Virus record (IMG/VR): IMGVR_UViG_3300020202_000001
Location: 1 to 64,000 of that record
DNA: 64,000 bases
Strand: one strand, 5' to 3'
In this document: positions 7,201 through 46,468 of the stretch, piece after piece
Layout of the letters: each line of letters opens with the position of its first letter
Position numbering within the stretch: the stretch's first letter is position 1
Notes under the pieces: generated by a model
What the model saw: only the letters and a program-made list of their open reading frames with translations
Database searches by the model: none
Told to the model about the DNA's origin: nothing
Position numbers and translations under genes: made by a program

Positions 7201-7480
7201 GAAGACCAACGCCCTCGACCCCGAGACGACGCCGAACCACCCGGAGCTGACGCTGCGGGAGGTGCAGATCGCCATCGGGATCGCCGAGGGCAAGACCTAC
7301 CCCGAGATCGGCGACGCGCTGGGCCTCGGGTACGAGACCGTCCGGTCGTACGTCAACCGGCTCCGCGAGAAGACCTGCAGGCGGCGGAAGGCCGAGCTGG
7401 CCATCTGGGCGTCGCAGGAGCGGAGCTGGCTCGAACACCAACAGACCGACCTCACCGCGAAGGGCCAGACCGATGTTTGA
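7193..7480 (+). CDS. LuxR/GerE-family helix-turn-helix regulator (stand-alone)
   Basis: LTLREVQI...AEGKTYPEIGDALGLGYETVRSYVNRLREK. Confidence 0.85.
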   Translation: MAKKTNALDPETTPNHPELTLREVQIAIGIAEGKTYPEIGDALGLGYETVRSYVNRLREKTCRRRKAELAIWASQERSWLEHQQTDLTAKGQTDV

Positions 7481-15840: not shown

Positions 15841-15917
15841 TTTCCCGGCGGACGCTTCCCGACACTCGACCGGACCACGGCGGCCCCGCGCCGCCACGAC
15901 GACCTTTGGGACAACTC

Positions 15918-19956: not shown

Positions 19957-20319
19957 ATGGACGCGCGTACCGCATTTAAGCAGGGCTTCATCGCCCACTG
20001 CATCGAGCTGGGACACACCGACCCGGCCGCGATCCGCGACATCGTCAAGCAGGCGTTCGTCACGGAGGCGGTCAACAAGGTCACGAACTTCGCCACCGGG
20101 GCCGGCAAGCTCGGCCTCGGGCTCGCCCTCGCCGCCCCGCCGATCGTCGGCGGCGTCGCCGGCCACCTCGCGGCCAAGGCGACCGACGTCTCGGACTACG
20201 ACGTCGAGGAGGCCAAGAAGCAAGAGGTCATCGACGAGTACCGCCGCCAGGCCGAGCGCATGCGGCGGTCCGGGCTGCTGCGTCGGTACACGGCGGGCGG
20301 GCCGGGCAACCTGCTCTAA
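19957..20319 (+). CDS. putative virion protein with hydrophobic Gly/Ala helix
   Basis: AAGGAGG SD; KQA motif. Confidence 0.6.
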   Translation: MDARTAFKQGFIAHCIELGHTDPAAIRDIVKQAFVTEAVNKVTNFATGAGKLGLGLALAAPPIVGGVAGHLAAKATDVSDYDVEEAKKQEVIDEYRRQAERMRRSGLLRRYTAGGPGNLL

Positions 20320-21646: not shown

Positions 21647-24600
21647 ATGGGCCGCCTCGGATCTGGCATCAACATCATGGGGGATTCGGACCTCGGCATC
21701 ATGGACGCGATGCCGGGGTTCGTCTCCGCGCCCATGCAGCTGCAGGCCCCGAAGCCCGTCGAGGAGGTCGAGGCCGAGCCCGAGGGGCTGCGGGCGTTCG
21801 GCGACGTGGACGCGACCCGCAAGGCGATCTACGACTCCGTGTTCGAGGCCGCCTCGAAGATGGAGCCGACGAAGAACCAGAAGCACACGCTCCGGCTGAC
21901 CGGCGTGCAGTGGCAGGACCCGGACAAGTTCACGATCCGCCAGCGGAAGGAGGCCCTGCTGCGGGGCGAGACGCTCGGCCGCCGGCTCAAGGGCACCTGG
22001 GAGCTGCTCGACAACGCGACGAACCAGGTGATCGACCGCCGCGAGCAGACCGTGCTCCGCGTCCCGCACCTGACCGGGGGCGGCACGTTCGTCCACAACG
22101 GAAGCGACTACGCGCTGGGCAACCAGCAGCGGCTCCGCTCGGGCATCTTCGCCCGCGTGAAGGACAACGGCGAGTACGAGTCGCACGTCAACGTGCTGGA
22201 GGGCGGCCCCTCGCACAAGATCCAGCTGAACCCGGAGAAGGGCGTCTTCTACGTCAACATCGGGCAGGCGAACATCCCGCTGCTGCCGCTGCTGCAGACG
22301 CTCGGGGCGAGCGAGAAGGACCTCCGCGCGGCGTGGGGCGACGACCTGTACGCCCGGAACTACCAGAAGGCGGACGGGACGGCGATGGCGAAGATCGTCG
22401 CCAAGTTCCTGAAGAAGCCGCCGGTCGACGGCACGAGCACGGCCGACGCCCTCCGCCAGACGTTCGAGAACATGCGGCTCGACCCCGAGGTCACCAAGCG
22501 GACGCTCGGCCAGCCGTACGACCGCCTGGGCAAGGACGCGCTGGTCGCCGCGACCGCCAAGCTCCTGCGGGTCCACCGCAAGGAGGAGGAGCCGGACGAC
22601 CGCGACCACCTCGCGTACCAGACGTTCCTCGGCCCCGAGGACCTGTTCGCCGAGCGGCTCCGCAAGGACCGCGCCGGCGTCCGCCGCAACATGCTCTTCA
22701 AGATCAGCGGCAAGGGCAGCCTGCGGGCGATGGGCTCCAGCCCGCTGCAGGACCAGATCGACTCGGCGATCATGTCGTCGGGGCTCGGCCAGGCCCTCGA
22801 AGAGATCAACCCGGCGGAGATCCTCGACAAGAACACGAAGATCAGCCGGATGGGCGAGGGCGGCATCCCGAGCTACGACGCGGTCCCCGACGAGGCCCGC
22901 GCCGTGCAGCCGTCGCACTTCGGGTTCATGGACCCGCTCCGCACCCCGGAGAGCTTCAAGGCCGGCGTGGACGTGTTCCTGAGCGGCAACGTCCGCAAGG
23001 GCCGCGACGGGAAGCTGTACGGCCGGTTCGTCGACGCCCGCACCGGCAAGCCGGCGTGGAAGACGCCGCAGGAGGTCGCGGACGCCGTCGTCACGTTCCC
23101 GGGGGCCGACAAGCTCCCGTACAAGCGCATCCCCGCGATGAAGAACGGGCGGATGGGCTGGGCGACCCGCGAGGAGGTCGGCCTGGTGCTGCCGACGATG
23201 GAGCACGCGTTCAGCCCGATCGACAACCTGATCCCGCTCAAGAGCCAGCTCAAGGGCCAGCGGGCCAGCATGGCGAGCCGGATGACCACCCAGGCCCTGC
23301 CGCTGGTCGGCGCTGAGGCCCCGCTGGTGCAGAGCGGCCTGCCCGGCTCCAAGGGCGAGCGGAGCTACGAGGAGGAGTACGCGAAGCACATGGGGGCCGT
23401 CGTCGCCGACCGCGGCGGCAAGGTCCTGGCCGTGACGCCGGACGCGATGACGGTGAAGTACGACGACGGCAAGGTCGACACGATCGAGCTGTACAACAAC
23501 TTCCCCTACAACCGCAAGACGGGCATCACGCAGACGCCGACCGTCAAGCCCGGCCAGCGGTTCGAGGCCAAGCAGCCGATCGCCCGGTCGAACTTCACGG
23601 ACGACAAGGGGGCCGCCGCGCTGGGGCTCAACGCCCGCGTCGCGTACATGCCGTGGGGCGGCCAGAACTTCGAGGACGCGATCGTCATCAGCGAGGGCAT
23701 GGCCAAGCGGATGACGTCCGAGCACATGTACCAGAACGGGCTGGAGGTGAACGACCGCACGAAGGTCGGCCGCAAGGAGTTCATCTCGCTCTTCCCGTCG
23801 AAGTACGACAAGGCCACGCTGGCGAAGCTCGACGATAAGGGCCTCATCAAGCCCGGCACCCAGGTCCACTTCGGCGACCCGCTGATCCTCGCCGCCGAGG
23901 AGCGGAGCACGGCCCAGAACAAGATCCACAAGAAGGGCACGCCCGCGTTCAACGACGTGTCCGTCACCTGGGACCACCACGACCCCGGCATCGTCACCGA
24001 CGTCGTCGAGGGCAAGAACGGCCCGGTCGTCCTGGTGAAGAGCCAGCACCCGATGCAGGTCGGCGACAAGATGAGCGGGCGGTACGGCGACAAGGGCGTC
24101 GTCAGCGCGATCATCCCGGACGACCAGATGCCGCACGACAAGGACGGCAAGCCGTTCGAGGTGCTGCTGAACGACCTGGGCGTCATCAGCCGGACGAACC
24201 CGAGCCAGTGGGCCGAGGCCAAGCTCGGGGCGATCGCCGCCAAGCTGGGCAAGGCGATGAAGGTCGAGGACTTCGACCCGGCGGTCGAGGACCGCGCGGC
24301 GTGGGTCGAGGAGCAGATGCGGAAGCACGGCATCCCCGACCAGGAGGACGTGACCGACCCGGTGCGGGGGACGAAGATCCCGGGCATCTCGACCGGCAAC
24401 CGCTTCTTCATGAAGCTCCACCACACGGCCGAGTCCAAGGGGCAGGGCCGCGGGTCGGGCGCGTACGCCTCGGACGACACGCCGGCCAAGGGCGGCGAGA
24501 CGGGCAGCAAGCGGAACTCGCTGCTGAACGTGAACGCCCTGCTCTCGCACGGGGCGACCGACTACCTGCAGGACGTCGGGGCGATCAGCGGCCAGCGGAA

Positions 24601-26152
24601 CGAGGACTACTGGCTCCAGTTCATGCAGGGGTTCTCGCCCCGCAAGCCGAAGGTCCCGCTCGTGTACGAGAAGTTCGTCAACGAGCTGAAGGGGGCCGGG
24701 ATCAACGTCGTCCGCGAGGGCAGCCAGCTCCACGTCATGGCGCTGACGGACAAGGACGTCGACCACCTGGCCGGCGACCGCGAGATCGAGGTCGGCGACA
24801 CGGTCGACTTCTACAACGAGCTGAAGCCCGTGAAGGGCGGCCTGTTCGACAAGACGAAGACCGGCGGCCACCACGGCAACCGGTGGGCGGCGATCAAGCT
24901 CGCGGAGCCGATGCCGAACCCGGTCATGGAGGAGCCGATCCGCCGCGTGCTCGGGCTGACGCAGAAGCGGTTCGAGGACGTGATCGCCGGCCGCGAGCCG
25001 CTGAACCCGCAGACCGGGGCGACCGGCCCGCGGGCGATCGCCGAGGCCCTGAAGACGATGAACGTCGACCGGGAGATCGCGATCGCCCGGGCGAAGATCC
25101 AGAACGGCACGAAGGCCGAGCGGGACATGGCCGTGCGGAAGCTCGGCTACCTCAAGAGCGCGAAGAAGACGGGCGTCCTGCCGGGCGACTGGGTGCTGAA
25201 CCGCGCCCCGGTCCTGCCGCCGCAGTTCCGCCCCGTGAACGTGATGGGCGGGAAGAACGTACCGCTCGTCGCGGACGCGAACTTCCTCTACAAGGAGCTG
25301 TTCGAGGCGAACAAGAACCTCCGCGACATGAGCGAGCAGGTGGGCGACGACGTCGGCGACGAGCGGCTGGCGGTGTACCACGCGTTCAAGGCGGTCACGG
25401 GCCTCGGCGAGCCGATCACGCAGAAGAGCCAGGAGAAACAGGTCAAGGGAATCCTAAAATCGGTTTTTGGATCTTCGCCGAAGTTCGGCACCGTGCAGCG
25501 GAAGCTGATCGGCTCCACGGTCGACAACGTCGGCCGGGGCGTCGTCGTCCCGAACCCGGACCTCGACATGGACAGCGTCGGGCTCCCGGAGGACCGGGCG
25601 TTCGACGTCTACAGCCGGTTCGTCGTCCGCCGCCTCCGCCGCTCGGGCATGCCGATGGCCCAGGCCCTGCGGCACGTCAAGGACAAGAGCCCGCTGGCCC
25701 GGAAAGTGCTGGTCGAGGAGATGGACCACCGGCCGGTGGTCGTCAACCGCGCCCCGGTGCTCCACCGGTTCGGCATCATGGCGTTCCGCCCCAAGCTCGT
25801 GAAGGGCTCGGTGCTGCACGTCCCGCCGCTGATCGTGAAGGGCTTCGGCATGGACTTCGACGGCGACGCGGTGCAGTACCACGTCCCGACGAGCGAGGAC
25901 GCCCGGGCCGAGGCCCTCGACCGGATGCTGCCCAGCCGGCAGCTGCTGAGCCCCGGCGACTTCAAAAGCCCCGTGCACGTCCCGGGGCAGGAGTACGTCG
26001 GCGGGCTGTACAAGGCGACGAGCGGCCGCAGCAAGCGGCCGGTCCGCTACTTCCGCAGCGCCAAGGACGTCCGCCACGCCTGGGAGCACGGTGAGGTCGC
26101 GATCGACGACGTCATCAAGGTCCTGGGCGACGCGGTCGCGGCGAAGCGGTAG
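21647..26152 (+). CDS. phage multisubunit-type RNA polymerase: beta fused to the N-terminal catalytic half of beta'
   Basis: beta motifs SHFGFMDPLRTPES, MPWGGQNFEDAI, GDKMSGRYGDKGVV, MKLHH; beta' motifs GGLFD, PVLPPQFRP, NRAPVLHR, catalytic GMDFDGD. Confidence 0.92.
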   Translation: MGRLGSGINIMGDSDLGIMDAMPGFVSAPMQLQAPKPVEEVEAEPEGLRAFGDVDATRKAIYDSVFEAASKMEPTKNQKHTLRLTGVQWQDPDKFTIRQRKEALLRGETLGRRLKGTWELLDNATNQVIDRREQTVLRVPHLTGGGTFVHNGSDYALGNQQRLRSGIFARVKDNGEYESHVNVLEGGPSHKIQLNPEKGVFYVNIGQANIPLLPLLQTLGASEKDLRAAWGDDLYARNYQKADGTAMAKIVAKFLKKPPVDGTSTADALRQTFENMRLDPEVTKRTLGQPYDRLGKDALVAATAKLLRVHRKEEEPDDRDHLAYQTFLGPEDLFAERLRKDRAGVRRNMLFKISGKGSLRAMGSSPLQDQIDSAIMSSGLGQALEEINPAEILDKNTKISRMGEGGIPSYDAVPDEARAVQPSHFGFMDPLRTPESFKAGVDVFLSGNVRKGRDGKLYGRFVDARTGKPAWKTPQEVADAVVTFPGADKLPYKRIPAMKNGRMGWATREEVGLVLPTMEHAFSPIDNLIPLKSQLKGQRASMASRMTTQALPLVGAEAPLVQSGLPGSKGERSYEEEYAKHMGAVVADRGGKVLAVTPDAMTVKYDDGKVDTIELYNNFPYNRKTGITQTPTVKPGQRFEAKQPIARSNFTDDKGAAALGLNARVAYMPWGGQNFEDAIVISEGMAKRMTSEHMYQNGLEVNDRTKVGRKEFISLFPSKYDKATLAKLDDKGLIKPGTQVHFGDPLILAAEERSTAQNKIHKKGTPAFNDVSVTWDHHDPGIVTDVVEGKNGPVVLVKSQHPMQVGDKMSGRYGDKGVVSAIIPDDQMPHDKDGKPFEVLLNDLGVISRTNPSQWAEAKLGAIAAKLGKAMKVEDFDPAVEDRAAWVEEQMRKHGIPDQEDVTDPVRGTKIPGISTGNRFFMKLHHTAESKGQGRGSGAYASDDTPAKGGETGSKRNSLLNVNALLSHGATDYLQDVGAISGQRNEDYWLQFMQGFSPRKPKVPLVYEKFVNELKGAGINVVREGSQLHVMALTDKDVDHLAGDREIEVGDTVDFYNELKPVKGGLFDKTKTGGHHGNRWAAIKLAEPMPNPVMEEPIRRVLGLTQKRFEDVIAGREPLNPQTGATGPRAIAEALKTMNVDREIAIARAKIQNGTKAERDMAVRKLGYLKSAKKTGVLPGDWVLNRAPVLPPQFRPVNVMGGKNVPLVADANFLYKELFEANKNLRDMSEQVGDDVGDERLAVYHAFKAVTGLGEPITQKSQEKQVKGILKSVFGSSPKFGTVQRKLIGSTVDNVGRGVVVPNPDLDMDSVGLPEDRAFDVYSRFVVRRLRRSGMPMAQALRHVKDKSPLARKVLVEEMDHRPVVVNRAPVLHRFGIMAFRPKLVKGSVLHVPPLIVKGFGMDFDGDAVQYHVPTSEDARAEALDRMLPSRQLLSPGDFKSPVHVPGQEYVGGLYKATSGRSKRPVRYFRSAKDVRHAWEHGEVAIDDVIKVLGDAVAAKR
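25451..25472. repeat. dispersed palindromic motif copy 5 (inside RNAP gene)
   Basis: ATCCTAAAATCGGTTTTTGGAT, within a run of rare codons gga atc cta aaa tcg gtt ttt gga tct. Confidence 0.8.
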
Positions 26153-26172
26153 CGTCAAGGAGGACGCGCACC

Positions 26173-26487
26173 ATGGAACTGATCGCTCGACCACTGAAGT
26201 TCGGCGGGCCGAAGCTGCGGCGGGTCGCCCAGGCCGCCCGGGACCGCAGCGGGCGGCTGGCGGTGAACACCCCGATGCTCCACCTGATCGAGGCGTGCTA
26301 CGCCGGCGGCCCCGACGACGTGCGGCTGGGCGTGGAGCACTACCACGACCCGCTGCTCGACGGGCTGTACGCCGACCCCGTGGCCGTCGCGGTGACCGCC
26401 GACCGCTCGCTCGTCGGGCCGGGTCACCCGGACGACCAGTACCGAGGCATCCCGCCGGAGCGGGCCGCCTGTATCCTGTTCTCCTGA
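26173..26487 (+). CDS. hypothetical protein
   Basis: SD in the GCGTC-AAGGAG-GACGC hairpin. Confidence 0.55.
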   Translation: MELIARPLKFGGPKLRRVAQAARDRSGRLAVNTPMLHLIEACYAGGPDDVRLGVEHYHDPLLDGLYADPVAVAVTADRSLVGPGHPDDQYRGIPPERAACILFS

Positions 26488-26581
26488 CCGCCGCAGCGCA
26501 CGGGGCTGGCGGCGGACCCGGTAGTTGTTACACTAACGGGTGAGCACGCAAGGAAGCACTCAACACGCAAGGACGCGACCT

Positions 26582-27349
26582 ATGTCGAAGCACCTCGTCA
26601 ACCCCCAGCTCCTCGGAATGGCGTACCAGAGCGTCGCCGGGTCGCTGGCCAAGCACGCCGCCGCACCGCAGCCCGTCGCGCGGTCGTTCAACCTGATGGA
26701 CCCGAACGGGTACGACAAGGCAGCCTTCGTGCCGGCCGGCGACCCGAGCATGGACCCCGCGGCGGCGGCCGGCGGCGGCGCTCCCCCGCCCCCGGGTGGC
26801 GACCCTGCGGCCGGCGGCGGCGGTGCTCCCCCGGCCCCACCGGCGGCCCCGCCGGTCGACCCGAACATGATCGCCCAGCAGGTGCTGTCGATGATCCAGT
26901 CGCAGGGCGGCGGGATGGGCGGCGGCGGGGGCATGGGCGGCGTCGAGCCGATCAAGCCGAAGATCGACGTCAACGTCGAGATGCTCCAGATCAAGAAGAT
27001 GCTCGCCAAGATCTGCGACACGCTCGGCATCGTCATCCCCGCGAGCGACATGGCCGTCACCAGCCAGGACCTGACCCAGATGGCCCAGCAGCAGGGCCAG
27101 GCGGGCGGGGCCGGCGGCGGTGCCCCGCAGCAGAGCGCGATCGCCCCGATCTCCCCGATGCAGCCGGCCGCGCCGGGCATGGGCGGGGGCGGCGACGCCG
27201 GCGGCGGCATGGGCGGCGGGCCGAAGATGGCCAGCGCCAAGCAGGCCGCGGTCAACAACGGCCGCGGGTTCAGCACCGAGGGCCTCGGCAACCTGACCAA
27301 CAAGGCGGCCGCGATCGCTCAGCTCCGCAGCCGCCGCCGGGCGGGGTAA
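26582..27349 (+). CDS. Gly/Pro/Met-rich putative internal head protein
   Basis: Low complexity, KxA motifs; extended -10 TGTTACACT at 26526. Confidence 0.6.
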   Translation: MSKHLVNPQLLGMAYQSVAGSLAKHAAAPQPVARSFNLMDPNGYDKAAFVPAGDPSMDPAAAAGGGAPPPPGGDPAAGGGGAPPAPPAAPPVDPNMIAQQVLSMIQSQGGGMGGGGGMGGVEPIKPKIDVNVEMLQIKKMLAKICDTLGIVIPASDMAVTSQDLTQMAQQQGQAGGAGGGAPQQSAIAPISPMQPAAPGMGGGGDAGGGMGGGPKMASAKQAAVNNGRGFSTEGLGNLTNKAAAIAQLRSRRRAG

Positions 27350-27358
27350 GCAGCGACC

Positions 27359-27637
27359 ATGTTCGTCGAGATCCTGTCCAAGTTCGGGGGCGAGCCGATC
27401 CGCATCGAGGCGGCCCAGCTCGTCGTGCGTAACGACTCCGGCACGCCCGTGATGGTGGCGGGGGAGTACGGCCCGAACAGCACGATCCGCGTCTCGCACG
27501 GCGCGGACGAAGACTTCAACCAGTCGCTCAGGGCCTTCGGCTACGGTCAGGAGACCGTGGTCATGGAGACCGTGAGCACCAGCAACACGCCGATCCCGGC
27601 CGGTGCCCGCCGCGTTGGCGGCCCGTTTGGTCGGTGA
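27359..27637 (+). CDS. hypothetical protein
   Basis: High-GC3 ORF. Confidence 0.55.
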   Translation: MFVEILSKFGGEPIRIEAAQLVVRNDSGTPVMVAGEYGPNSTIRVSHGADEDFNQSLRAFGYGQETVVMETVSTSNTPIPAGARRVGGPFGR

Positions 27638-27665
27638 CACCCCGTTCTCCGAAGGAGACACCCCG

Positions 27666-28682
27666 ATGGCAGCGAACGAAAGCTCGAACAAGGCCTACTA
27701 CGGCAGCGGCCAGAAGTCCGTCATCAACAACAAGAACCCCCTGTACCGCACGGGCAACGTCAACGACCCGCTCCAGGCCAACGCCTCCCCCGTCCACGTC
27801 GCCGGCGACACCTCGACCGACCAGTATTACAAGAACGGCGGCTCGAAGATGCAGCGGCGGGCGGCCGAGCCCGCGAAGTTCATCCCGGTCGACCCCCGCG
27901 CCGACTCCAAGGCCCGCCCGGCCGCCGGTGCCGCGTACACGACGCCGCTGGAGGGCGACCTCCGCCGGCCGCTGCTGGTGAAGGAGGGCCACCCCGCCGC
28001 GATCCGCGCCGCCGTCGCCCGCATCGTCGAGCTGCTGCTCGGCGGCACGAGCCCGGTAATCGTCCACGTCGCCGACGTCGGCTTCGAGCCGGACATCCGC
28101 ACGGGCCTCGACATCCGCGTCGCCCGCGAGGAGATCTCCCGCGACCAGTACCGCGACGTCCAGTTCTCCCTGGCCCCGAAGACCGGCACCGAGCTGGCCG
28201 ACCAGACGTTCGGCGCGATCGACCCGGCGAGCCTGCCCGAGGTCAAGGTCGGCGAGGACCCCGAGGACGCGATCCCCGACGACATCGAGGCGTTCGTCAA
28301 GGGCAACACCGACGCGGACGACGTCGCCCCGGCCGCCCCCGAGGCGAGCCGCGTCCAGACGATCTCCGCCCCGGCCGCCCCGGCCGAGGACAACGACGAC
28401 ACGGACGACGACGTGACCAACACGCAGGGCTCGGACGGCCCGCAGGGTCCGGCCGGCGTCGCCGACGAGGCCCCGGTCGGCAACGTCCCCCGTCCCGAGG
28501 CCGTCAAGGCGGCCCCCGAGGCGAGCAACGAGGAGCCGGCGATCTCCACGACCGCCCCGGCGGCCGCCGACACCGACGACGAGGCCGAGACGGCCGACGA
28601 GCCGGCGGCCACGGGCGACGCCGCCCCCGCCGCCGCCGCCGACGCACCGGCGACCGGCAAGAAGGGCCGCAACCGCCGCTGA
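27666..28682 (+). CDS. hypothetical protein with acidic Ala/Asp-rich C-terminus
   Basis: AAGGAG SD; high GC3. Confidence 0.6.
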   Translation: MAANESSNKAYYGSGQKSVINNKNPLYRTGNVNDPLQANASPVHVAGDTSTDQYYKNGGSKMQRRAAEPAKFIPVDPRADSKARPAAGAAYTTPLEGDLRRPLLVKEGHPAAIRAAVARIVELLLGGTSPVIVHVADVGFEPDIRTGLDIRVAREEISRDQYRDVQFSLAPKTGTELADQTFGAIDPASLPEVKVGEDPEDAIPDDIEAFVKGNTDADDVAPAAPEASRVQTISAPAAPAEDNDDTDDDVTNTQGSDGPQGPAGVADEAPVGNVPRPEAVKAAPEASNEEPAISTTAPAAADTDDEAETADEPAATGDAAPAAAADAPATGKKGRNRR

Positions 28683-28759
28683 TCCTGACAGTCCGCACGC
28701 GACGACGACGCACCCCGCGGACCGGCCTCGGCTGGCTACCACGGGGTGCGTCGTGTTAA

Positions 28760-28782
28760 GATCCAAAAACCGGTTTTGAGAA
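28760..28782. repeat. dispersed palindromic motif copy 6
   Basis: GATCCAAAAACCGGTTTTGAGAA. Confidence 0.9.
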
Positions 28783-28816
28783 GCCACGGACGGCGACACA
28801 CAAGGCACGGAGGCCT

Positions 28817-31573
28817 GTGCAAACGACGGTCGGCCAACTCCTCGTCAACGAGCACCTGCCCGAGGACCTGCGGAACCACGACCGCGTCCTCGACAAGAAG
28901 GGCATCAACGCGCTCCTCCGCGACGTCGCCCAGCGGCACCCCGAGAAGTACCGCGAGATCTCCCACGCCCTCTCGACGATCGGCTGGCGGGCCGCCCAGG
29001 AGACGGGCGGCTACAGCTTCGGCATGCAGCACCTCCGCCCGGCGAAGGCCGCCCTGGCCCTGCGGGCGAAGCTCCGCGAGCAGATGCGGCAGGTGCTCGA
29101 CGACGACAACCTCGACGACAAGACCCGCGAGGACCGCATCACCCGGCTGGCCGGCGCGCTCCAGAAGCAGCAGCAGGAGGATGTGTTCAACGAGAGCCTG
29201 GCCGAGAAGAACCCGCTCGCCTACCAAGTGCTCTCCGGCTCCCGCGGCAACAAGATGAACCTCGCGAGCCTGCGGGGCTCGGACATGCTGTACGCCGACC
29301 ACCGGGACAACGTGATCCCGGTGCCGGTCCTGTCGAGCTACAGCGAGGGGCTGAAGCCGTGGGAGTATTGGGCCGGGACGTACGGTGCCCGCAAGGGTGT
29401 CATGGACGTGAAGTTCGCGACGCAGGACGCCGGCTTCCTGTCCAAGCAGCTGAACCAGGTCACGCACCGGCTCGTGGTCGAGGCCCTCGACCGCGACGGC
29501 GACGGCGAGCCGGACGCCCCGCCCCGCGGGCTCCCGGTCGACACGGACGACATGGACAACGAGGGCTCGCTCCTCGCCCACGACGTCGGCCCGTACAAGC
29601 GGAACACGGTGCTGACCCCGAAGATCCTGTCGCACCTCCGGCAGATCGGGCAGAAGCGCATCCTCGTGCGGAGCCCGGCCGTGGGCGGCACCCCGAACGG
29701 CGGCGTGTACGCCCGCGACGTCGGCGTCCGCGAGCACGGCACGCTCCCCGGCCGGGGCGAGATGCCCGGCCTCGCCGCCGTGCAGGCGCTGTCCGAGCCG
29801 CTGACGCAGGCCCAGATCTCCTCCAAGCACACGGGCGGCGTCGCCGGCGAGGGCAAGGCGATCTCCGGCTTCGAGTACGTCAACCAGCTCGTGCAGGTGC
29901 CGAAGAAGATGAAGGGCGGGGCGGCCCACTCCGACGAGGACGGCGTCGTCGGGCGGATCATCCCCGCCCCGGCCGGCGGCAACTACGTCTACGTGAACGG
30001 CAAGGAGCACTACGTCCCCGAGGGCGTCGAGCTGAAGGTCAAGCCGGGCGACCAGGTCGAGGCGGGCGACGTGCTGACCGCCGGCCTGCCGAACCCGTCC
30101 AAGATCGTCGAGCACAAGGGCATCGGCGAGGGCCGGCGGTACTTCGTCAAGGCGTTCCGGGAGGCGATGGGCGGGGCGAACATGACCGCCAACCGCCGGA
30201 ACATCGAGCTGCTGTCGCGGGGGCTCATCAACCACGTCCGGCTGACGGACGAGGTGGGCGAGCACGCGCCGGACGACCTCGTGCCCTACCACCTGGTCGA
30301 GAGCCGGTACCAGCCCCGCGACGACGCCGCCGAGGTCGAGCCGACGCTGGCCGGCAACCAGTACCTCGAACAGCCCGTGCTGCACTACACGGTCGGCACC
30401 CGCGTCCGCCCGAGCGTGATGCGGGACCTGCAGGAGTTCGGCGTGAAGAAGGTCCGCGTCCACCGCGACCCGCCGCCGTTCAAGGCCGAGATGGTCCGCG
30501 GCATGACCAGCCTGGCGAACGACCCGGACTGGATGACACGGATGTACGGCTCGGGGCTCAAGGGCGGGCTGCTGAAGGCGGTCCACCGGGGCGGCACGAG
30601 CGACGAGGCGGGCACGAGCTTCGTCCCGAGCCTGGCCAAGGCCGTCGACTTCGGCCGCACGCCCGGCGGCATCGTCCGCAAGCCGTCGCCCGGGTGGGCA
30701 CCCGAGCCGCCCGCCGCGATCAAGGTCGGCAGCTCCCCCGGCGTCCCGGGCGGACCGGCCGCCGGCGACGCCCCCGGCGCGCCGGGCGGGATCGGCTCGC
30801 CCCCGGGCGGGCTCGCCCCGCCGAAGCTCGCGCCGGCACCCGCCGCTCCGAAGCCCGCAGCGCCGGCCCCGCCGCCGGCGGCGACGCCCGCCCCCGCGCC
30901 GGCACCGGTGAAGCAGTACATGCCCGACACGGCCGCCCCGGAGCCACAGGCCCCGCTGTGGTTCGGCGGGTACCAGCCGCAGCGCGGGTTCAACCAGCAG
31001 GCGGCGACCGCCCTGATGCCGTACGCCCAACACCTGGGGCCGCTCGCCCCGCTGGCGGTCATGGCCGGCGTCGACTTCAAGGCCCTCGGCACGCTGACCG
31101 GGCAGAAGGACTGGACGCACGGCACCGACTACACGCAGGGCCTTAGGACGCCGCAGACGCCCGCACCCGCCCTCCCGGCCCCTCCGACGCCCCCGGCGGC
31201 TCCTGCGACGCCCCAGGCCCCTCCGGCGGCCCCTGCGGTCCCGCCCCAGCAGCCGCCGGCACCCGTCCAGCCGCCGCCGGCCGCCCAACAACCGGGCTCA
31301 GCCGCTCCGAAGCCGCCTCTGCAGTTCAAGAGCGAGGCCGAGTTCTTCGCCCACCCGCCGGTGCAGACCGCGCTGCAGGGCTTCCGGGGCAAGCTGTTCA
31401 GCCAGGTGACGCCGCAGGGCTTCCACTGGGCAGGCGAGATCGCCGGCATGCCGCAGATGCAGCAGGCGGTGAAGTGGGAGCTGGAGCAGTACGTGCACCA
31501 CCAGGACCCGGCCCGCCTGCAGGCCGGGCTCGACGCCGTGTACCAAGTCGTGATGAAGGCGAGGCAGCCATAA
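28817..31573 (+). CDS. RNA polymerase beta' C-terminal half (funnel, bridge helix, trigger loop) with Pro-rich C-terminal extension
   Basis: TTVGQLLVN, SGSRG, SYSEGL..EY..GARKG, TQDAGFLSKQL, AVQALSEPLTQ..HTGG. Confidence 0.88.
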   Translation: MQTTVGQLLVNEHLPEDLRNHDRVLDKKGINALLRDVAQRHPEKYREISHALSTIGWRAAQETGGYSFGMQHLRPAKAALALRAKLREQMRQVLDDDNLDDKTREDRITRLAGALQKQQQEDVFNESLAEKNPLAYQVLSGSRGNKMNLASLRGSDMLYADHRDNVIPVPVLSSYSEGLKPWEYWAGTYGARKGVMDVKFATQDAGFLSKQLNQVTHRLVVEALDRDGDGEPDAPPRGLPVDTDDMDNEGSLLAHDVGPYKRNTVLTPKILSHLRQIGQKRILVRSPAVGGTPNGGVYARDVGVREHGTLPGRGEMPGLAAVQALSEPLTQAQISSKHTGGVAGEGKAISGFEYVNQLVQVPKKMKGGAAHSDEDGVVGRIIPAPAGGNYVYVNGKEHYVPEGVELKVKPGDQVEAGDVLTAGLPNPSKIVEHKGIGEGRRYFVKAFREAMGGANMTANRRNIELLSRGLINHVRLTDEVGEHAPDDLVPYHLVESRYQPRDDAAEVEPTLAGNQYLEQPVLHYTVGTRVRPSVMRDLQEFGVKKVRVHRDPPPFKAEMVRGMTSLANDPDWMTRMYGSGLKGGLLKAVHRGGTSDEAGTSFVPSLAKAVDFGRTPGGIVRKPSPGWAPEPPAAIKVGSSPGVPGGPAAGDAPGAPGGIGSPPGGLAPPKLAPAPAAPKPAAPAPPPAATPAPAPAPVKQYMPDTAAPEPQAPLWFGGYQPQRGFNQQAATALMPYAQHLGPLAPLAVMAGVDFKALGTLTGQKDWTHGTDYTQGLRTPQTPAPALPAPPTPPAAPATPQAPPAAPAVPPQQPPAPVQPPPAAQQPGSAAPKPPLQFKSEAEFFAHPPVQTALQGFRGKLFSQVTPQGFHWAGEIAGMPQMQQAVKWELEQYVHHQDPARLQAGLDAVYQVVMKARQP

Positions 31574-33777
31574 TGCGATCCACGTTCGCCCCTCTCCTCG
31601 AACCGTTGCTCAAGGCCGCCGAGGGCGTGCCCGGCAGCACCGGCGCGGCTACGGTCCCGGGCGGCGGCGGTGCCCCCAAGCCGATCGGCCTGAACTTCGG
31701 CGGCGGCGGTGCCGGCGGCGGCGGCACGAACCCGTACCTCAAGCCCGCGACCCAGCCCACGACCGTGCCGCCCGGCACGCTCGCCCCGGCCCCGAACCGG
31801 CCGGCGGCGGCGGCACCCGCCGCCCCCGCGCCCGCGCAGCCCGTGCAGCCCAACGCCAACGGCGGCGGCTTCCACCTGCCCGGACCCGGCGGCGGCCAGC
31901 CGCAACCGCAACAGCAGCAGCAGCCCGCGCCGGCACCGCCCCCGGCCGGCGGCAACCCGTTCCTGTCGAACCCGTACCTCCAGGGTCCGCCCAAGCTCGA
32001 CCCGAGCGCGTACGACCAGCAGACGCTGGCCAACGCCGGCACGAGCTGGGCCGGCGGCACCCCGCCGCCCGAGGTCGCGGCCCGTTGGGATTCGGTGCGG
32101 AACCCGCCGTGGCGGCCGAGCGTGCGGTCGCAGATGAGCCGCGACCGGTGGCCCAACGTCCCGTTCGTGGGGCTGCAGGACCCGACGAACACCGGGCAGG
32201 GCGTCCCCGGCGGCGCGATGGCGATGCAGAACAACCTGTTCGCCGGCACGCTCGCCAACGACTTCGCCCTCCGCCCGACCGCGTGGGGCGCGGGCCAGGG
32301 CGCGAGGCTGCTCACCGGCTCGACCCCGGCGTGGCTCGGCGGCACGAGCCGGTTCCTCGGCGGGGCCAGCCACCTCGGCAACGCGGCCGCCCCGCTGATG
32401 CTGAACTACGACGTGACCGAGGACGGCAGCGGGAACATGAACCAGGCGGTCATGTCGCCGGCCATGCTCCGCATGCTCGCGACCGGGAAGTACGCCCCCA
32501 CCGCTGCCCCCGGCGCGACGGCGCTCGGCCGGGCCGGTGCCGCCGGCGGTCGCGTCCTGCCGTACGCCTACTGGGCGGCCGAGCTGGGCAAGGAGGGGTA
32601 CGGCAGCTACGCCCGGGGCAAGGAGCTGGACCCGAACGCGAACTGGCTCGTGGCGACCGGGAAGGGCAACGCCGACCGGTACATGCAGCTGACGCGGGCG
32701 AACGACCGGGCCGCCCACGGCAGCTGGGCCGACGTCATGGCCCAGGCGGGCGAGAACATGGACCACCCGGTCCAGATGCTCGAACACGCCCCCGAGGTCG
32801 TCTACCGGGGCGGGCAGGCGATCAACGCCGGTGCCGGGGCCTGGTCGTCCGCCCGCGACGTGAACGCCGGCTCGGGCCGACTGGACACGGCGCTGGAGGC
32901 CGCCAACGCCGCGCGGCAGCAGTCCGGGGCGACGCCGTACGAGCGGCGGATCGGCAGCACCCAGGTCGACTTCACCGACCGGACCTCGAACGCCTGGCAG
33001 CTCGGGTTCCTGCCCGACGACAAGCGGGTCCGGCCGAAGCACCTGGGCACGGGCGAGGTGTACGAGGACGAGCGGCTCTTGCCCCAGCGGTGGCAGGTTG
33101 CCCGCCGGCTCGACGCGGCCCGGCCGTTCATCCACCCGAACCTCCCGGAGCCGTACGCCCACGCCCTGACCGCCGTGTTCGACCCGAACCACCCGGAGTA
33201 CAACGACGACGGGGCGATGATCCTCCGCGAGCGGCTGGCCGCCAGCCCGCCCAAGGACGCCGCCGGCGTGCAGCAGGCGGTCGACGCGGTGTTCGGCCCG
33301 AACAACGGCCCCGCCCAGCAGACCGCTGCCCTGCGGCAGTCGGCGGCCGAGGCCGCGCGGGCGCACCAGCGGGCCGTCGACGAAGCGCCGCGGACCGGCG
33401 GCGGGTCGCGGACAAGTTGTTTCAGCGGCCTGCCGCAGGGCATGGTCGACACCCGCCGGTGCCACGCGATGACGCGGAGCATCGGCCAACTGCAGCTGAG
33501 CGGGATGGACCCCTACCGGGAGGGGGCGCGGGAGGACTGGCTGCAGCGGAACGCGCCGGCCGTCCAGCAGGCCCGCGACGCTTCGCGGTACACGCACCAG
33601 GCGATCGACGAGGACGCCCCGGTCCCCCAGCCGACGTACCGGCACTACGGGCCGGACCTGGTGACCGGCCGGATGCAAGGCAGCGGCCGCGACCCGGCGA
33701 CGCTCTCCCCCGAGGATCTGGCGATCCTCCGGCGGTGGATCAACGGCCAGAGCGCCGCCCCGGACCAGCCGAAGTGA
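31573..33777 (+). CDS. large Gly/Ala/Pro-rich putative virion (ejection-type) protein
   Basis: TAATG coupling to the beta' C-half gene; N-terminal LKAA. Confidence 0.55.
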   Translation: MRSTFAPLLEPLLKAAEGVPGSTGAATVPGGGGAPKPIGLNFGGGGAGGGGTNPYLKPATQPTTVPPGTLAPAPNRPAAAAPAAPAPAQPVQPNANGGGFHLPGPGGGQPQPQQQQQPAPAPPPAGGNPFLSNPYLQGPPKLDPSAYDQQTLANAGTSWAGGTPPPEVAARWDSVRNPPWRPSVRSQMSRDRWPNVPFVGLQDPTNTGQGVPGGAMAMQNNLFAGTLANDFALRPTAWGAGQGARLLTGSTPAWLGGTSRFLGGASHLGNAAAPLMLNYDVTEDGSGNMNQAVMSPAMLRMLATGKYAPTAAPGATALGRAGAAGGRVLPYAYWAAELGKEGYGSYARGKELDPNANWLVATGKGNADRYMQLTRANDRAAHGSWADVMAQAGENMDHPVQMLEHAPEVVYRGGQAINAGAGAWSSARDVNAGSGRLDTALEAANAARQQSGATPYERRIGSTQVDFTDRTSNAWQLGFLPDDKRVRPKHLGTGEVYEDERLLPQRWQVARRLDAARPFIHPNLPEPYAHALTAVFDPNHPEYNDDGAMILRERLAASPPKDAAGVQQAVDAVFGPNNGPAQQTAALRQSAAEAARAHQRAVDEAPRTGGGSRTSCFSGLPQGMVDTRRCHAMTRSIGQLQLSGMDPYREGAREDWLQRNAPAVQQARDASRYTHQAIDEDAPVPQPTYRHYGPDLVTGRMQGSGRDPATLSPEDLAILRRWINGQSAAPDQPK

Positions 33778-33817: not shown

Positions 33818-33860
33818 TGAGGCTCGGGCTACACGGACCGGTTTTCCACGGATGGAACAA

Positions 33861-45523: not shown

Positions 45524-46468
45524 ATGCCCGCAGGCATCACCACCCAGGAAGAGAGCCGCCTCCTCAACGAGGCCCTGTTCGAGAAGCTCTCCAGCCACGA
45601 CCCCTCGCTCGAAAAGCAGGCCGTGGACGCGGTGAACGACTTCACCCGCACGAAGATGCGCGAAGACGGCTTTTACCGGCGGATCATGCCGCCGCTGCCG
45701 ATCAGCAACGACGAGCTGGACCGCCAGGTCGACACCGACAAGCCGGTCAAGGTCGTCGACAAGGAACCGGACAGCCCGGCCGCGATCAGCATCCCGTTCG
45801 CGACGCTGCCGCAGAACCTGTACATCCGCGGCCCGCGCTACCGCGTGATGTTCGACCGCATCGTGACGCCCCGCTTCACCAAGGACGTCGACGAGCTGCG
45901 GACCTGGATCATGGACATCCGACAGGTGCTGTCGGACAACGCGATCAAGGACATGCTGGCGGAGGAGGACGGCAAGTTCGTCCGCGCCGTCAACACCGCG
46001 ATGGTCGGCGCGGGCCTGGTCGTCCCGACCAGCGGCGTCGTCCAGCACGAGGTCATCAGCGGCGGGATCACTCGCGACACCCTCTGGGACGCGATGAAGA
46101 TCATGCCGAACACCCCGTCGAACCTGGAGGTCCACACGATCCTGGTGAACCACATCACGATCAAGGAGATCTGCAAGTTCGGCCGCAACGAGATGGGCGG
46201 CGACCTGTCGCAGGACATCATGCGGAACGGGTGGACGCAGACGGAGTTCATGGGCAAGACCTGGATCATCACGATCAAGAAGGGTCTCGTGCCGACGAAC
46301 ACGATGTACATGTTCAGCGACCCGAAGTTCATCGGGAAGTCGTACGTGCTCGAAGACACGACGATGTACATCCGGCGCGAGGCGTTCATGCTGGAGTTCT
46401 TCGCGTACGAGACGATGGGTGGCTCGATCGGCCACACCAGCGGCCTCGCCCGCGTCGACTACCAGTGA
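45524..46468 (+). CDS. major capsid protein (HK97-like, inferred)
   Basis: Position after protease/scaffold; RTKMREDGFYRRIMPP, backbone-helix-like IKDMLAEEDGKFV; 314 aa. Confidence 0.7.
   Translation: MPAGITTQEESRLLNEALFEKLSSHDPSLEKQAVDAVNDFTRTKMREDGFYRRIMPPLPISNDELDRQVDTDKPVKVVDKEPDSPAAISIPFATLPQNLYIRGPRYRVMFDRIVTPRFTKDVDELRTWIMDIRQVLSDNAIKDMLAEEDGKFVRAVNTAMVGAGLVVPTSGVVQHEVISGGITRDTLWDAMKIMPNTPSNLEVHTILVNHITIKEICKFGRNEMGGDLSQDIMRNGWTQTEFMGKTWIITIKKGLVPTNTMYMFSDPKFIGKSYVLEDTTMYIRREAFMLEFFAYETMGGSIGHTSGLARVDYQ

What the first reader, a model, noticed from the sequence alone, without database searches (positions are those of the whole stretch)
21647..31573. RNA polymerase with a non-cellular split: beta+beta'N fusion and a separate beta'C, embedded among virion genes
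Seen: the 1501-aa ORF runs from beta motifs straight into beta' up to a variant catalytic motif (GMDFDGD instead of NADFDGD), so both double-psi barrels are in one chain. The beta' Zn-binding Cys cluster is absent after GGLFD. Bridge helix and trigger loop are in a second gene 2.7 kb downstream with a ~300-aa Pro-rich extension. No alpha or sigma gene is in the window. Established: phiKZ/AR9-type phage RNAPs are split into four beta/beta' pieces and are highly diverged. This enzyme keeps easily recognisable bacterial motifs but with a different architecture. Inference: a two-subunit, probably virion-packaged RNAP.
Basis: partly seen in the sequence, partly recalled or inferred. Interest (0 to 1): 0.7.

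Follow-up and report, generated by a model that had tools for sequence, protein, structure and literature searches.

The report
Phage RNA polymerase: fused beta-beta'N plus beta'C
A 224-kb soil phage encodes its own bacterial-type RNA polymerase in just two large chains (beta fused to the first half of beta', and a separate second half of beta'), an arrangement that hundreds of uncultured phages and a few cultured ones share but that I found described in no paper.

Summary
ORF 21647-26152 (1501 aa) is a complete beta subunit joined in frame to beta' residues ~17-560 (E. coli numbering). ORF 28817-31573 (918 aa) holds the rest of beta' (bridge helix, trigger loop) plus a ~300-aa Pro/Ala-rich tail. 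The beta' zinc ribbon is deleted, the second zinc site is lost, and the catalytic motif reads GMDFDGD with all three Asp kept.

It is not an assembly error. An independent 87-kb contig matches with no differences, and 76 of 80 related IMG/VR contigs keep the fusion. The beta'C gene lies 0.8-5.9 kb downstream in the 70 of those 80 loci where it was found. Each complete genome has one polymerase set.

Distant cultured relatives exist: Salmonella phage Arash and Vibrio phages D69, D181 and D148. In Arash, published mass spectrometry of phage particles finds both chains among the most-detected proteins.

On a beta tree the fused enzymes form one clade outside the sampled bacteria and apart from YerA41-type phage polymerases. 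No alpha gene was found. A sigma-like gene lies outside the window and is conserved in five relatives.

Verdict: a real, conserved, undescribed variant of phage multisubunit RNA polymerase. Virion packaging is plausible but untested for this phage.

The parts
21647..26152 (+). Gene for the beta::beta'N fusion (1501 aa). Beta is about aa 1-1030. The junction is at aa ~1018-1038 (nt 24698-24760). Beta'N is about aa 1035-1501.
   Evidence: Pfam, PDB hits, alignment to E. coli RpoB/RpoC. GC3 is 0.99 over the whole ORF.
24062..24100 (+). Beta double-psi barrel active-site motif GDKMSGRYGDKGV, with both catalytic lysines kept.
   Evidence: Alignment with E. coli GDKMAGRHGNKGV.
22775..22855 (+). Equivalent of rifampicin cluster I. 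It carries D516E, H526K and F514A (E. coli numbering), so drug insensitivity is predicted.
   Evidence: Alignment. The prediction is an inference from known resistance positions.
24836..24886 (+). GGLFD...GGHHGNRW: the site where the beta' N-terminal zinc ribbon is deleted.
   Evidence: Alignment. There are no Cys in this segment in 84 family members that matched the pattern.
25847..25867 (+). Beta' catalytic motif GMDFDGD (Mg-binding Asp triad intact).
26173..28682 (+). Four small ORFs between the two polymerase genes (104, 269, 92 and 359 aa). They are poorly conserved and have no family match.
   Evidence: tblastn hits in only 0-8 of 80 related loci.
28757..28786 (.). One copy of a genome-wide AT-rich near-palindrome (GATCCAAAAACCGGTTTTGAGAAG), 50 nt upstream of the beta'C start codon. 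Candidate promoter or operator.
   Evidence: The RNA hairpin is no better than shuffled sequence.
28817..30661 (+). Beta'C core (aa 1-615): F-loop, bridge helix (nt 29357-29470), trigger loop (nt 29768-29851) and conserved C-terminal region. The second zinc site is lost.
   Evidence: Pfam, PDB, alignment, complex model. The GTG start and the N-terminus VQTTVGQLL are conserved in L009.
30662..31573 (+). Pro/Ala-rich tail of beta'C (~300 aa), with one conserved hydrophobic block (MPYAQHLGPLAPLAVMAGVDF, nt 31016-31078).
   Evidence: Long tails occur only in the window's near subclade.
31573..33777 (+). Low-complexity ORF (734 aa) whose ATG overlaps the beta'C stop codon (TAATG). Its middle part resembles the distal tail of a relative's beta'C.
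   Evidence: (27% identity over 183 aa to P0128, E 8e-6).
33852..36458 (+). Conserved neighbour (868 aa). It is present directly after beta'C in 62 of 80 relatives. Its C-terminus resembles Arash protein gp218, which was detected in phage particles.
   Evidence: No family or fold match.
45524..46468 (+). Major capsid protein.
   Evidence: PHROG 2522 (E 3.5e-7). 30% identity to Arash gp226 MCP and to the Vibrio D69 homologue.

Best explanation
The two genes encode the catalytic core of a phage-owned, bacterial-type (two double-psi barrel) DNA-dependent RNA polymerase built from two chains.

Chain 1 is a whole beta subunit fused at its C-terminus to beta' residues ~17-560. It therefore carries both barrels and the Mg-binding DFDGD motif. 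Chain 2 is beta' from residue ~570 onward (F-loop, bridge helix, trigger loop, C-terminal region). It docks onto chain 1 as the two halves of beta' do in cyanobacteria.

The enzyme is a stripped-down core:
- it has no lineage-specific inserts;
- both zinc sites are gone;
- the genome has no detectable alpha homologue.

The covalent beta-beta' link probably takes over part of the assembly role that the alpha dimer plays in cells (inferred).

Promoter choice is probably given by a conserved phage sigma-like protein encoded about 40 kb downstream (inferred).

The genome has a single polymerase set, and the genes lie in the block syntenic with the Arash module detected in phage particles. Both Arash homologues are abundant in phage-particle preparations. 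The most likely life cycle is therefore this (inferred, not shown for this phage). The polymerase is made late and packed into the capsid. It is injected with the DNA and transcribes early genes without host RNA polymerase. Newly made copies then carry on through the cycle.
For: Shown here:
- Domain content and motif-level homology.
- All catalytic residues are intact.
- Chain 1 ends and chain 2 begins about 10 residues apart in E. coli beta' coordinates.
- Complex model of P0001:1120-1501 with P0002:1-615: score 0.75, best control 0.20. This mark was reached by 51 of 78 solved complexes and 2 of 108 mismatched pairs.
- The fusion is kept in 76 of 80 IMG/VR relatives, and a beta'C gene was found downstream in 70 of those 80 loci.
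- All 150 best beta'C cluster representatives start at about residue 1, so all are split forms.
- There is one beta copy in this genome, in five complete relatives, and in Arash and D69.
- No alpha homologue.
- Sigma-like g068 hits only sigma factors in the PDB and is conserved in 5 of 5 relatives at 39-50% identity.
- Synteny with Arash proteins detected in phage particles by mass spectrometry: g038~gp218, g043~gp222, g047~MCP gp226, g056~gp234, g059~gp236.
- g038 follows beta'C in 62 of 80 relatives.

From the literature:
- Arash gp206 (3516 spectra, the most detected protein), gp216 (1210 spectra) and sigma Gp10 were found in phage-particle preparations (PMC10585845).
Against: - There is no proteomic, transcriptomic or biochemical data for this phage or its near clade.
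- The Arash homologues share only ~26-30% identity. The Arash authors themselves note that abundant enzymes could be carried over into phage preparations.
- The complex model may pass from memory of solved beta' structures.
- Alpha or omega analogues too diverged for Pfam, or use of host alpha/omega, cannot be excluded.
- The beta flap-tip region that binds sigma region 4 looks shortened in the alignment, so sigma use is uncertain.
- Most neighbouring genes have no recognisable virion-protein family.
Confidence: 0.7

Rival explanations
1. The enzyme is a phage RNA polymerase but is not packaged. Host RNA polymerase transcribes the early genes, including these. The phage enzyme then takes over middle and late genes, as with T7 RNAP or the phiKZ non-virion enzyme. 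On this view its position next to the conserved virion-homologue genes is only gene order.
For: - No direct virion data exist for this phage.
- The Arash authors mention possible carry-over of abundant enzymes.
- A conserved sigma-like factor would suit an intracellular enzyme equally well.
- The genes between and around the polymerase genes have no recognisable virion function.
Against: - In the Arash phage-particle MS the fusion protein is the single most-detected protein, and beta'C and a sigma factor are also found.
- There is only one polymerase set per genome. If early genes needed host RNAP, one would expect recognisable host-type promoters, but this was not tested.
- The genes are conserved inside the block that includes the capsid gene.
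Confidence: 0.22
2. The chains are host-derived auxiliary genes that replace beta and beta' inside the host enzyme. They would assemble with host alpha2, omega and sigma rather than form an autonomous phage polymerase.
For: - The phage has no alpha or omega gene.
- Bacterial motifs are well kept, including the beta' clamp helices that bind sigma.
Against: - Identity to bacterial beta and beta' is only ~27-30%.
- On the beta tree the fused enzymes form one clade (SH-aLRT 99) outside all 26 sampled bacterial RpoB sequences. Recent capture is therefore excluded.
- A phage-specific sigma-like gene co-occurs in 5 of 5 relatives.
- AR9 and phiKZ enzymes work without alpha (PMC7598289).
Confidence: 0.07
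3. The fusion is an artefact, such as a mis-assembly, a frameshift error or a chimeric contig.
For: None found.
Against: - An independent contig of 86,984 bases matches 23500-29400 with 0 differences and 0 gaps in two runs.
- The same junction sequence is present in L009, Arash and Vibrio D69, in the 120 best homologues, and in 76 of 80 IMG/VR loci.
- Codon-position GC is uniform across the junction.
Confidence: 0.01

Closest known systems
Salmonella phage Arash gp206 and gp216, and the homologues in Vibrio phages D69, D181 and D148
   Same: Same architecture. Beta fused to beta'N in one ORF of ~1525 aa that covers 91-96% of P0001, with beta'C as a separate gene downstream. The N-terminal zinc ribbon is deleted, each genome has one polymerase set, and the genes neighbour the capsid and virion genes. 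They form one clade with the window's enzyme on the beta tree. Arash has MS evidence that both chains are in phage-particle preparations.
   Different: Only ~26-30% identical. Beta'C is 606-609 aa with no tail. The second zinc site (four Cys) is kept. The catalytic motif is AADYDGD. The genomes are ~180-187 kb, of lower GC, with enterobacterial or Vibrio hosts. GenBank labels them simply 'beta subunit' or hypothetical, and the fusion is not remarked on in the Arash paper.
mReC: multi-subunit RNAP-encoding Caudovirales (Weinheimer and Aylward 2020, PMC7481178)
   Same: Uncultured tailed phages whose beta and beta' are alignable with cellular COG0085 and COG0086 and branch deeply, apart from Bacteria. 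My beta tree gives the same kind of placement.
   Different: The mReC table lists beta and beta' as separate ORFs (about 920-1560 and 900-1370 aa), often as two sets per contig. Their capsids match T4-type PF07068. Here there is one set, a fused ORF, and a capsid protein with no Pfam match. The paper does not mention fusion, sigma or virions. Six related IMG/VR contig lengths were not in its tables. Whether the two groups are sister lineages was not tested.
phiKZ / AR9 (PBS2) jumbo-phage virion and non-virion RNAPs
   Same: Phage-encoded beta/beta' homologues without alpha or omega. Beta' is split just after the catalytic barrel, close to the cyanobacterial site. One enzyme is packaged and injected (PMC7598289).
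   Different: Those enzymes have 4-5 pieces with beta also split, two paralogous sets per genome, no recognisable sigma homologue, and sequences so diverged that they are hard to place on trees. Here beta is whole and fused, there is one set, a sigma-like gene is present, and motifs are easily aligned.
Yersinia phage YerA41 and Cobetia phage Carin-5 RNAP genes
   Same: Phage beta and beta' homologues detectable by BLAST with P0001. YerA41 also splits beta' into N and C pieces.
   Different: Gene order is beta'N-beta'C-beta (YerA41) or beta'-beta (Carin-5), with beta as a separate 924-927-aa protein. They sit on a separate long branch of the beta tree.
Natural RpoB-RpoC fusions of Helicobacter and Wolbachia, and engineered E. 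coli beta::beta' fusions (my knowledge, not checked here)
   Same: The beta C-terminus is linked directly to the beta' N-terminus. This shows that the link is sterically possible in a working enzyme.
   Different: Those are full-length beta' in cellular enzymes with alpha2 and omega. Here beta' stops after the catalytic barrel and the rest is a second chain.
Cyanobacterial and plastid split beta' (gamma/RpoC1 plus beta'/RpoC2)
   Same: Beta' is divided after the catalytic barrel. P0001 ends about 58 residues before the gamma C-terminus, and P0002 starts about 16 residues before the cyanobacterial beta' start. The split points are therefore ~20-25 residues apart.
   Different: Beta is a separate subunit there. 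Zinc sites, alpha and omega are present, and a large insert sits in the trigger loop.
Other virion-delivered RNAPs: N4 vRNAP, crAss-like gp66, P23-45 tape-measure-fused RNAP
   Same: The proposed strategy is the same: inject a polymerase so that early genes need no host enzyme.
   Different: Unrelated (N4, T7-like) or extremely diverged single-chain two-barrel enzymes. None keeps bacterial beta/beta' sequence motifs.

Membership tests
Bacterial-type multisubunit RNAP catalytic core (beta/beta') | Beta barrel with the two catalytic lysines, and the NFED motif | tested here: met
   GDKMSGRYGDKGV and NFEDA align with E. coli. Rpb2_6 E 5e-52.
Bacterial-type multisubunit RNAP catalytic core (beta/beta') | Beta' barrel with the DxDGD Mg-binding triad | tested here: met
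   GMDFDGD at aa 1401-1407. The three Asp are kept in 115 of 120 homologues, and no motif was found in the other five.
Bacterial-type multisubunit RNAP catalytic core (beta/beta') | Bridge helix and trigger loop | tested here: met
   P0002 aa 181-218 and 318-345 align with E. coli beta' 769-805 and ~920-940. Rpb1_5.
Bacterial-type multisubunit RNAP catalytic core (beta/beta') | Alpha dimer and omega as assembly subunits | tested here: not met
   No PF01000 or PF01193 match in the 224-kb genome at E<=10, while all 14 control genomes match. Omega was not searched. Use of host subunits is not testable here.
Bacterial-type multisubunit RNAP catalytic core (beta/beta') | Two beta' zinc-binding sites | tested here: not met
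   The ribbon is deleted and the four Cys of site 2 are replaced.
Fused beta-beta'N / beta'C phage RNAP family (Arash-like; named here) | Beta and beta'N in one ORF of ~1450-1530 aa with the same junction | tested here: met
Fused beta-beta'N / beta'C phage RNAP family (Arash-like; named here) | Separate beta'C gene a few kb downstream on the same strand | tested here: met
   The gap is 2.7 kb here and 0.8-5.9 kb in relatives.
Fused beta-beta'N / beta'C phage RNAP family (Arash-like; named here) | Monophyly of the beta part | tested here: met
   SH-aLRT 99 for the window clade plus Arash/D69. Quick search, LG+G4, 3 bacterial phyla only.
phiKZ/AR9-type jumbo-phage RNAP | Beta split into two or more polypeptides | tested here: not met
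   Beta is continuous and fused to beta'N.
phiKZ/AR9-type jumbo-phage RNAP | Two paralogous sets (virion and non-virion) | tested here: not met
   Single PF00562 and PF00623 locus in the complete genome.
phiKZ/AR9-type jumbo-phage RNAP | No recognisable sigma homologue | tested here: not met
   g068 and g125 are sigma-like.
mReC (Weinheimer and Aylward 2020) | Separate beta and beta' ORFs of >=800 aa, with NADxDGD in the beta' ORF | tested here: not met
   The motif lies in the fused ORF, and the separate beta' piece lacks it.
mReC (Weinheimer and Aylward 2020) | T4-type capsid protein (PF07068) | tested here: not met
   g047 has no Pfam match at E<=0.05.
mReC (Weinheimer and Aylward 2020) | Placement inside the mReC RNAP clade | not tested
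   I held no mReC sequence. Both groups branch outside Bacteria.
Virion-packaged RNA polymerase | Protein present in purified virions | not testable with these tools
   Homologues in Arash were detected by MS. There is no data for this uncultured phage.
Virion-packaged RNA polymerase | Early transcription independent of host RNAP | not testable with these tools
   No RNA run holds the sequence.

The most novel reading that the evidence does not exclude
This is a third, independent lineage of phage multisubunit RNA polymerases, beside phiKZ/AR9 and mReC. It would be an ancient sister of all bacterial enzymes, reduced to a zinc-free, alpha-free two-chain core with its own sigma-like factor, packed into virions. 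That would make a widespread group of ~180-235-kb phages independent of host transcription without a phage nucleus. As the smallest natural bacterial-type core that still aligns residue by residue with cellular enzymes, it would be a ready model for how beta/beta' assemble and start transcription without alpha.
Probability: 0.35. Interest if true: 0.75.

Novelty: new variant of a known kind. Interest (0 to 1): 0.62.

Why it matters
Phage multisubunit RNA polymerases are currently discussed almost only through the phiKZ/AR9 enzymes, which have four or five very diverged pieces. [quoted passage not shown]

This family shows a different solution. It is common in soil and aquatic metagenomes: there are 118 related contigs in IMG/VR, and all 150 listed 50%-identity beta'C cluster representatives are of this split form. 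The core has two chains, no zinc and no alpha, yet it keeps bacterial motifs and comes with a conserved sigma-like factor.

Three open questions become testable:
- how a beta/beta' core assembles without the alpha platform;
- whether a sigma-type factor can serve a virion-delivered enzyme;
- how deep the phage branch of the RNAP tree really is.

Cultured members (Arash and the Vibrio phages) make the experiments feasible.

Tried and rejected
- PHROGs and Pfam on about 45 neighbouring ORFs gave almost nothing beyond ribonucleotide reductase, a weak capsid hit and a weak DUF2345 hit. The 'virion genes' context therefore rests on homology to the Arash proteins detected by MS.
- An Atlas look-up of g038 gave no usable hit.
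- A megablast of the region against phage genomes found nothing.
- A genome-contig scan with the family alignment picked family-specific patterns. It returned only three phage contigs binned into MAGs and no bacterial rpoB.
I therefore sampled bacterial RpoB from the phyla of those three MAGs. These phyla are unnamed and cover only part of Bacteria.
- I considered whether the ORFs between the two genes (g032-g035) are extra polymerase subunits. This was rejected as unlikely because they are hardly conserved.
- I considered whether the ECF-like sigma g125 is the partner. It is absent from 5 of 5 relatives, whereas g068 is conserved.
- I considered the intergenic palindrome as a terminator or RNA hairpin. 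Folding energies are no better than for shuffled sequence, so a DNA-level role is more likely.
Membership stays open.
- No RNA-seq run holds the sequence.
- The many short 'joints' have 20-25-nt sides at 90% likeness. I treat them as noise from other organisms.
Full report
**What the window is.** The 64-kb window is the first part of a 224,418-bp IMG/VR virus record with direct terminal repeats, estimated 100% complete. It has ~69% G+C and nearly all genes lie on the + strand. The sequence is held by soil metagenome runs. It is therefore an uncultured soil jumbo phage.

**Checking the observation.** ORF 21647-26152 translates to 1501 aa without stops, and ORF 28817-31573 to 918 aa.
- Pfam finds Rpb2_3 and Rpb2_6 (beta) followed by Rpb1_1 and Rpb1_2 (beta') in the first ORF, and Rpb1_5 in the second.
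- Against PDB sequences, the first protein matches beta over residues ~60-1050 and beta' over 1097-1496. The second matches the C-terminal half of beta'.
- I fetched E. coli rpoB and rpoC and aligned them with the window's proteins, a 72%-identical relative (L009), Salmonella phage Arash and Vibrio phage D69.
- The end of beta (E. coli ...LGINIELEDE) aligns with GINVVREGS. About ten residues later the chain continues as beta' from about residue 17.
- After GGLFD, the CxC...CxxC zinc ribbon is missing in all four phage sequences.
- The beta' clamp helices are kept.
- The catalytic motif is GMDFDGD.
- Chain 1 stops at about E. coli beta' residue 560. Chain 2 begins at about residue 570 (TTVGQ matching TTVGR).
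- Chain 2 carries the F-loop, bridge helix, a trigger loop without the proteobacterial SI3 insert, and the conserved C-terminal region up to about aa 615.
- The four Cys of the second beta' zinc site are replaced in the window and in L009, but kept in Arash and D69.
- After aa 615 comes a ~300-aa Pro/Ala-rich tail.

**Not an artefact.**
- Independent contigs from two runs (which may be the source sample) cover 23500-29400 in one 86,984-base piece with no differences, at word depths 386 and 102.
- The 120 best hits in a 5.8-billion-protein collection are almost all ~1470-1500 aa and carry both beta and beta' Pfam domains. They come from contigs of up to 235 kb.
- In IMG/VR, 118 contigs encode a relative. 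Of 80 fetched, 76 have the beta C-terminal part and beta'N in one ORF. The other four are interrupted by inserts.
- A beta'C gene was found 0.8-5.9 kb downstream on the same strand in 70 of those 80 loci. Most of the others are contigs that end too soon.
- All 150 best 50%-identity cluster representatives of beta'C begin at the equivalent of residue 1, so all are split forms.

**Variation inside the family.**
- The first two positions of the catalytic motif vary: NADFDGD 72, GADFDGD 32, GMDFDGD 8, NMDFDGD 2, SADFDGD 1. The Asp triad does not vary.
- Long beta'C tails (hundreds to more than 1600 aa, poorly conserved) are typical of the window's near subclade.
- Most IMG/VR relatives at ~53-56% identity, and Arash and D69, have a 606-680-aa beta'C with no tail.
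- The next ORF in the window (31573-33777) starts at an ATG that overlaps the beta'C stop (TAATG). Part of it resembles the distal tail of a relative's beta'C. The tail thus seems to have been split into, or joined from, a neighbouring gene during evolution.
- Many relatives carry intein- or homing-endonuclease-sized inserts in both genes, clustered at the bridge helix and the trigger loop.

**Do the chains fit together?** A complex model of beta'N (P0001:1120-1501) with the beta'C core (P0002:1-615) scored 0.75 against a best control of 0.20. In the tool's calibration this mark was reached by 51 of 78 solved complexes and 2 of 108 mismatched pairs. Solved beta' structures exist, so the pass may reflect memory of the fold. 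It shows likeness to a normal beta', which is what matters here.

**Other subunits.**
- No alpha homologue is detectable in the genome.
- There is one polymerase set in this genome, in five complete relatives, and in Arash and D69.
- Two sigma-like genes lie outside the window. g125 (124018-124776) has regions 2 and 4 and looks ECF-like. g068 (71781-72539) has regions 3 and 4.
- g068 hits only sigma factors in the PDB, with a best E of 3e-4. It is conserved at 39-50% identity in 5 of 5 complete relatives.
- g125 is found in none of them.
- Arash and D69 also encode sigma factors. These are too diverged to match g068 by BLAST.
- The ORFs between the two polymerase genes are barely conserved, so they are unlikely to be core subunits.

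**Genomic context and the virion question.**
- Ribonucleotide reductase genes lie upstream.
- Few neighbouring ORFs match any family.
- There is clear synteny with the Arash region that encodes proteins detected in phage particles: g031~gp206, g036~gp216, g038~gp218, g043~gp222, g047~gp226 (major capsid protein), g056~gp234, g059~gp236.
- g038 follows beta'C in 62 of 80 relatives.
- The portal homologue lies at 200172-202100.
- In the Arash paper, mass spectrometry of phage particles found gp206 as the most-detected protein (3516 spectra), gp216 at 1210 spectra, and sigma Gp10 as well. The authors add that abundant enzymes might be carried over (PMC10585845).

Packaging is therefore a reasonable inference for the family, but it is untested for this phage.

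**Evolutionary placement.** I built a maximum-likelihood tree of the beta part (839 columns, LG+G4, quick search). The rows were 14 members of the window's clade, Arash, D69, YerA41, Carin-5, E. coli and 25 RpoB sequences from three unnamed bacterial phyla.
- All fused enzymes fall in one clade (SH-aLRT 99).
- That clade lies outside a fully supported bacterial clade, on a branch of length 1.3.
- It is separate from YerA41 and Carin-5.
- Identity to E. coli beta and beta' is ~27-30% in the alignable parts.

This argues for one old origin of the fusion and against recent capture from a host. The caveats are that only part of bacterial diversity was sampled, there is no archaeal outgroup, and no site-heterogeneous model was used.

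**Comparison with what is known.**
- Reviews of jumbo-phage polymerases describe only the phiKZ/AR9 type: beta and beta' each split, two sets, no sigma.
- The mReC study reported metagenomic tailed phages with deep-branching beta and beta'. Its tables list separate beta and beta' ORFs, often two sets per contig, with T4-type capsids. The paper does not mention a fusion, sigma or virions.
- Six related contig lengths were not in the mReC tables. Whether the two groups are related lineages is open.
- Each structural element has a cellular precedent. Beta-beta' fusions occur in Helicobacter and Wolbachia (my knowledge). A beta' split occurs ~20-25 residues away in cyanobacteria. I found the combination described nowhere, nor the loss of both zinc sites and of alpha.
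- The Arash and Vibrio records carry the genes, but only as 'beta subunit' or 'hypothetical protein'.

**Likely mechanism.**
- Shown: two chains that together contain every catalytic element of a bacterial core.
- Inferred: they assemble without alpha, helped by the covalent beta-beta' link. This is by analogy with the alpha-less AR9/phiKZ enzymes.
- Inferred: g068 supplies promoter recognition.
- Inferred: the enzyme is made late, packaged and injected, then transcribes early genes (from the Arash MS data and the single polymerase set).
- Inferred: the rifampicin pocket carries changes at classic resistance positions (D516E, H526K, F514A), so insensitivity is predicted.

**A side observation on transcription signals.**
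- A ~22-bp AT-rich near-palindrome (core AAAACCGGTTTT) occurs 25 times in the genome. Almost all copies are intergenic, often directly after a stop codon, and mostly 10-50 nt before the next + strand start codon. One copy lies 50 nt before the beta'C start.
- As RNA it folds no better than shuffled sequence.
- Relatives have their own recurrent palindromes of similar design: GAAAACGTTTTC in front of beta'C in L009, and AAAAACGTTTTT, AAAGATATCTTT and GGAGACGTCTCC in others.
- It is a candidate promoter or operator. A LuxR/GerE-type HTH protein (7070-7480) is one possible binder.

**Verdict.** It is a conserved, widespread and so far undescribed architectural variant of phage multisubunit RNA polymerase. 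Virion delivery is supported indirectly.

Noticed in passing
window 4064, 8324, 12390, 19474, 28767, 37147, 42688, 54003, 63258 (core positions), plus 16 more in the genome: A ~22-bp AT-rich near-palindrome, GATCYMAAAACCGGTTTTKRGAW. There are 25 copies in 224 kb, nearly all intergenic, mostly 10-50 nt upstream of + strand start codons and often abutting the previous stop codon. The RNA hairpins are weak. It is a candidate phage promoter or operator.
   Followed up: partly
L009 17204-17221; L131, L071, L077, L062 and others: Relatives carry their own recurrent palindromes of the same style: TTAGAAAACGTTTTCTAA before beta'C in L009, AAAAACGTTTTT, AAAGATATCTTT and GTGGAGACGTCTCCAC. This suggests a signal that co-evolves with a phage DNA-binding protein.
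   Followed up: partly
genome 71781-72539 (L016) and 124018-124776 (L017), outside the window: Two sigma-like genes. The first (regions 3 and 4; PDB hits are all sigma factors) is conserved in 5 of 5 complete relatives. The second (ECF-like, regions 2 and 4) is found in none of them.
   Followed up: yes
window 7070-7480 (+): A small LuxR/GerE-type helix-turn-helix protein (PF00196, E 5e-7). It is a possible binder of the 20-bp palindrome.
   Followed up: no
relatives P0008, P0017, P0030, P0062 (fusion gene); P0137, P0146, P0184 and others (beta'C): Many family members are 300-900 aa longer. They carry intein or LAGLIDADG domains, or inserts at beta'C positions ~198/209 (bridge helix) and ~334 (trigger loop). 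The polymerase genes are hot spots for selfish inserts.
   Followed up: partly
window 31571-31575 and 31573-33777: The beta'C stop codon and the next ORF's start overlap (TAATG). That low-complexity 734-aa ORF partly matches the distal tail of a relative's longer beta'C, as if the tail had been split off.
   Followed up: partly
window 14515-17645 (+): Ribonucleotide reductase small and large subunit genes lie just upstream of the polymerase block.
   Followed up: no
window 60547-63252 (+): A 901-aa protein with a weak DUF2345 match (VgrG-type spike domain, E 1e-4, below the cut-off). Possibly the baseplate spike.
   Followed up: no
window 3438-3526 (-) and 20067-20146 (-): ARAGORN calls tRNA-Tyr and tRNA-Lys on the minus strand inside high-GC3 plus-strand ORFs. 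These are probably false positives.
   Followed up: no
L012 (Rhizobium phage RHph_Y65, MN988525.1 154425-157808): Kleczkowskaviridae Rhizobium phages encode a 1127-aa beta'-like protein, but no beta (PF00562) is detectable in the 207-kb genome. A lone beta' homologue of unknown role.
   Followed up: partly
L052 (YerA41) and L053 (Carin-5): Further phage polymerase layouts: beta'N-beta'C-beta in YerA41 and beta'-beta in Carin-5. Phage beta/beta' architectures are thus more varied than the phiKZ scheme.
   Followed up: partly
G001 (MAG holding L020): A 174,705-bp contig of this phage family is binned as the largest contig of a 3.7-Mb bacterial MAG that has its own normal rpoB. This is a case of a phage contig inside a MAG, and weak evidence at best for the host.
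   Followed up: no
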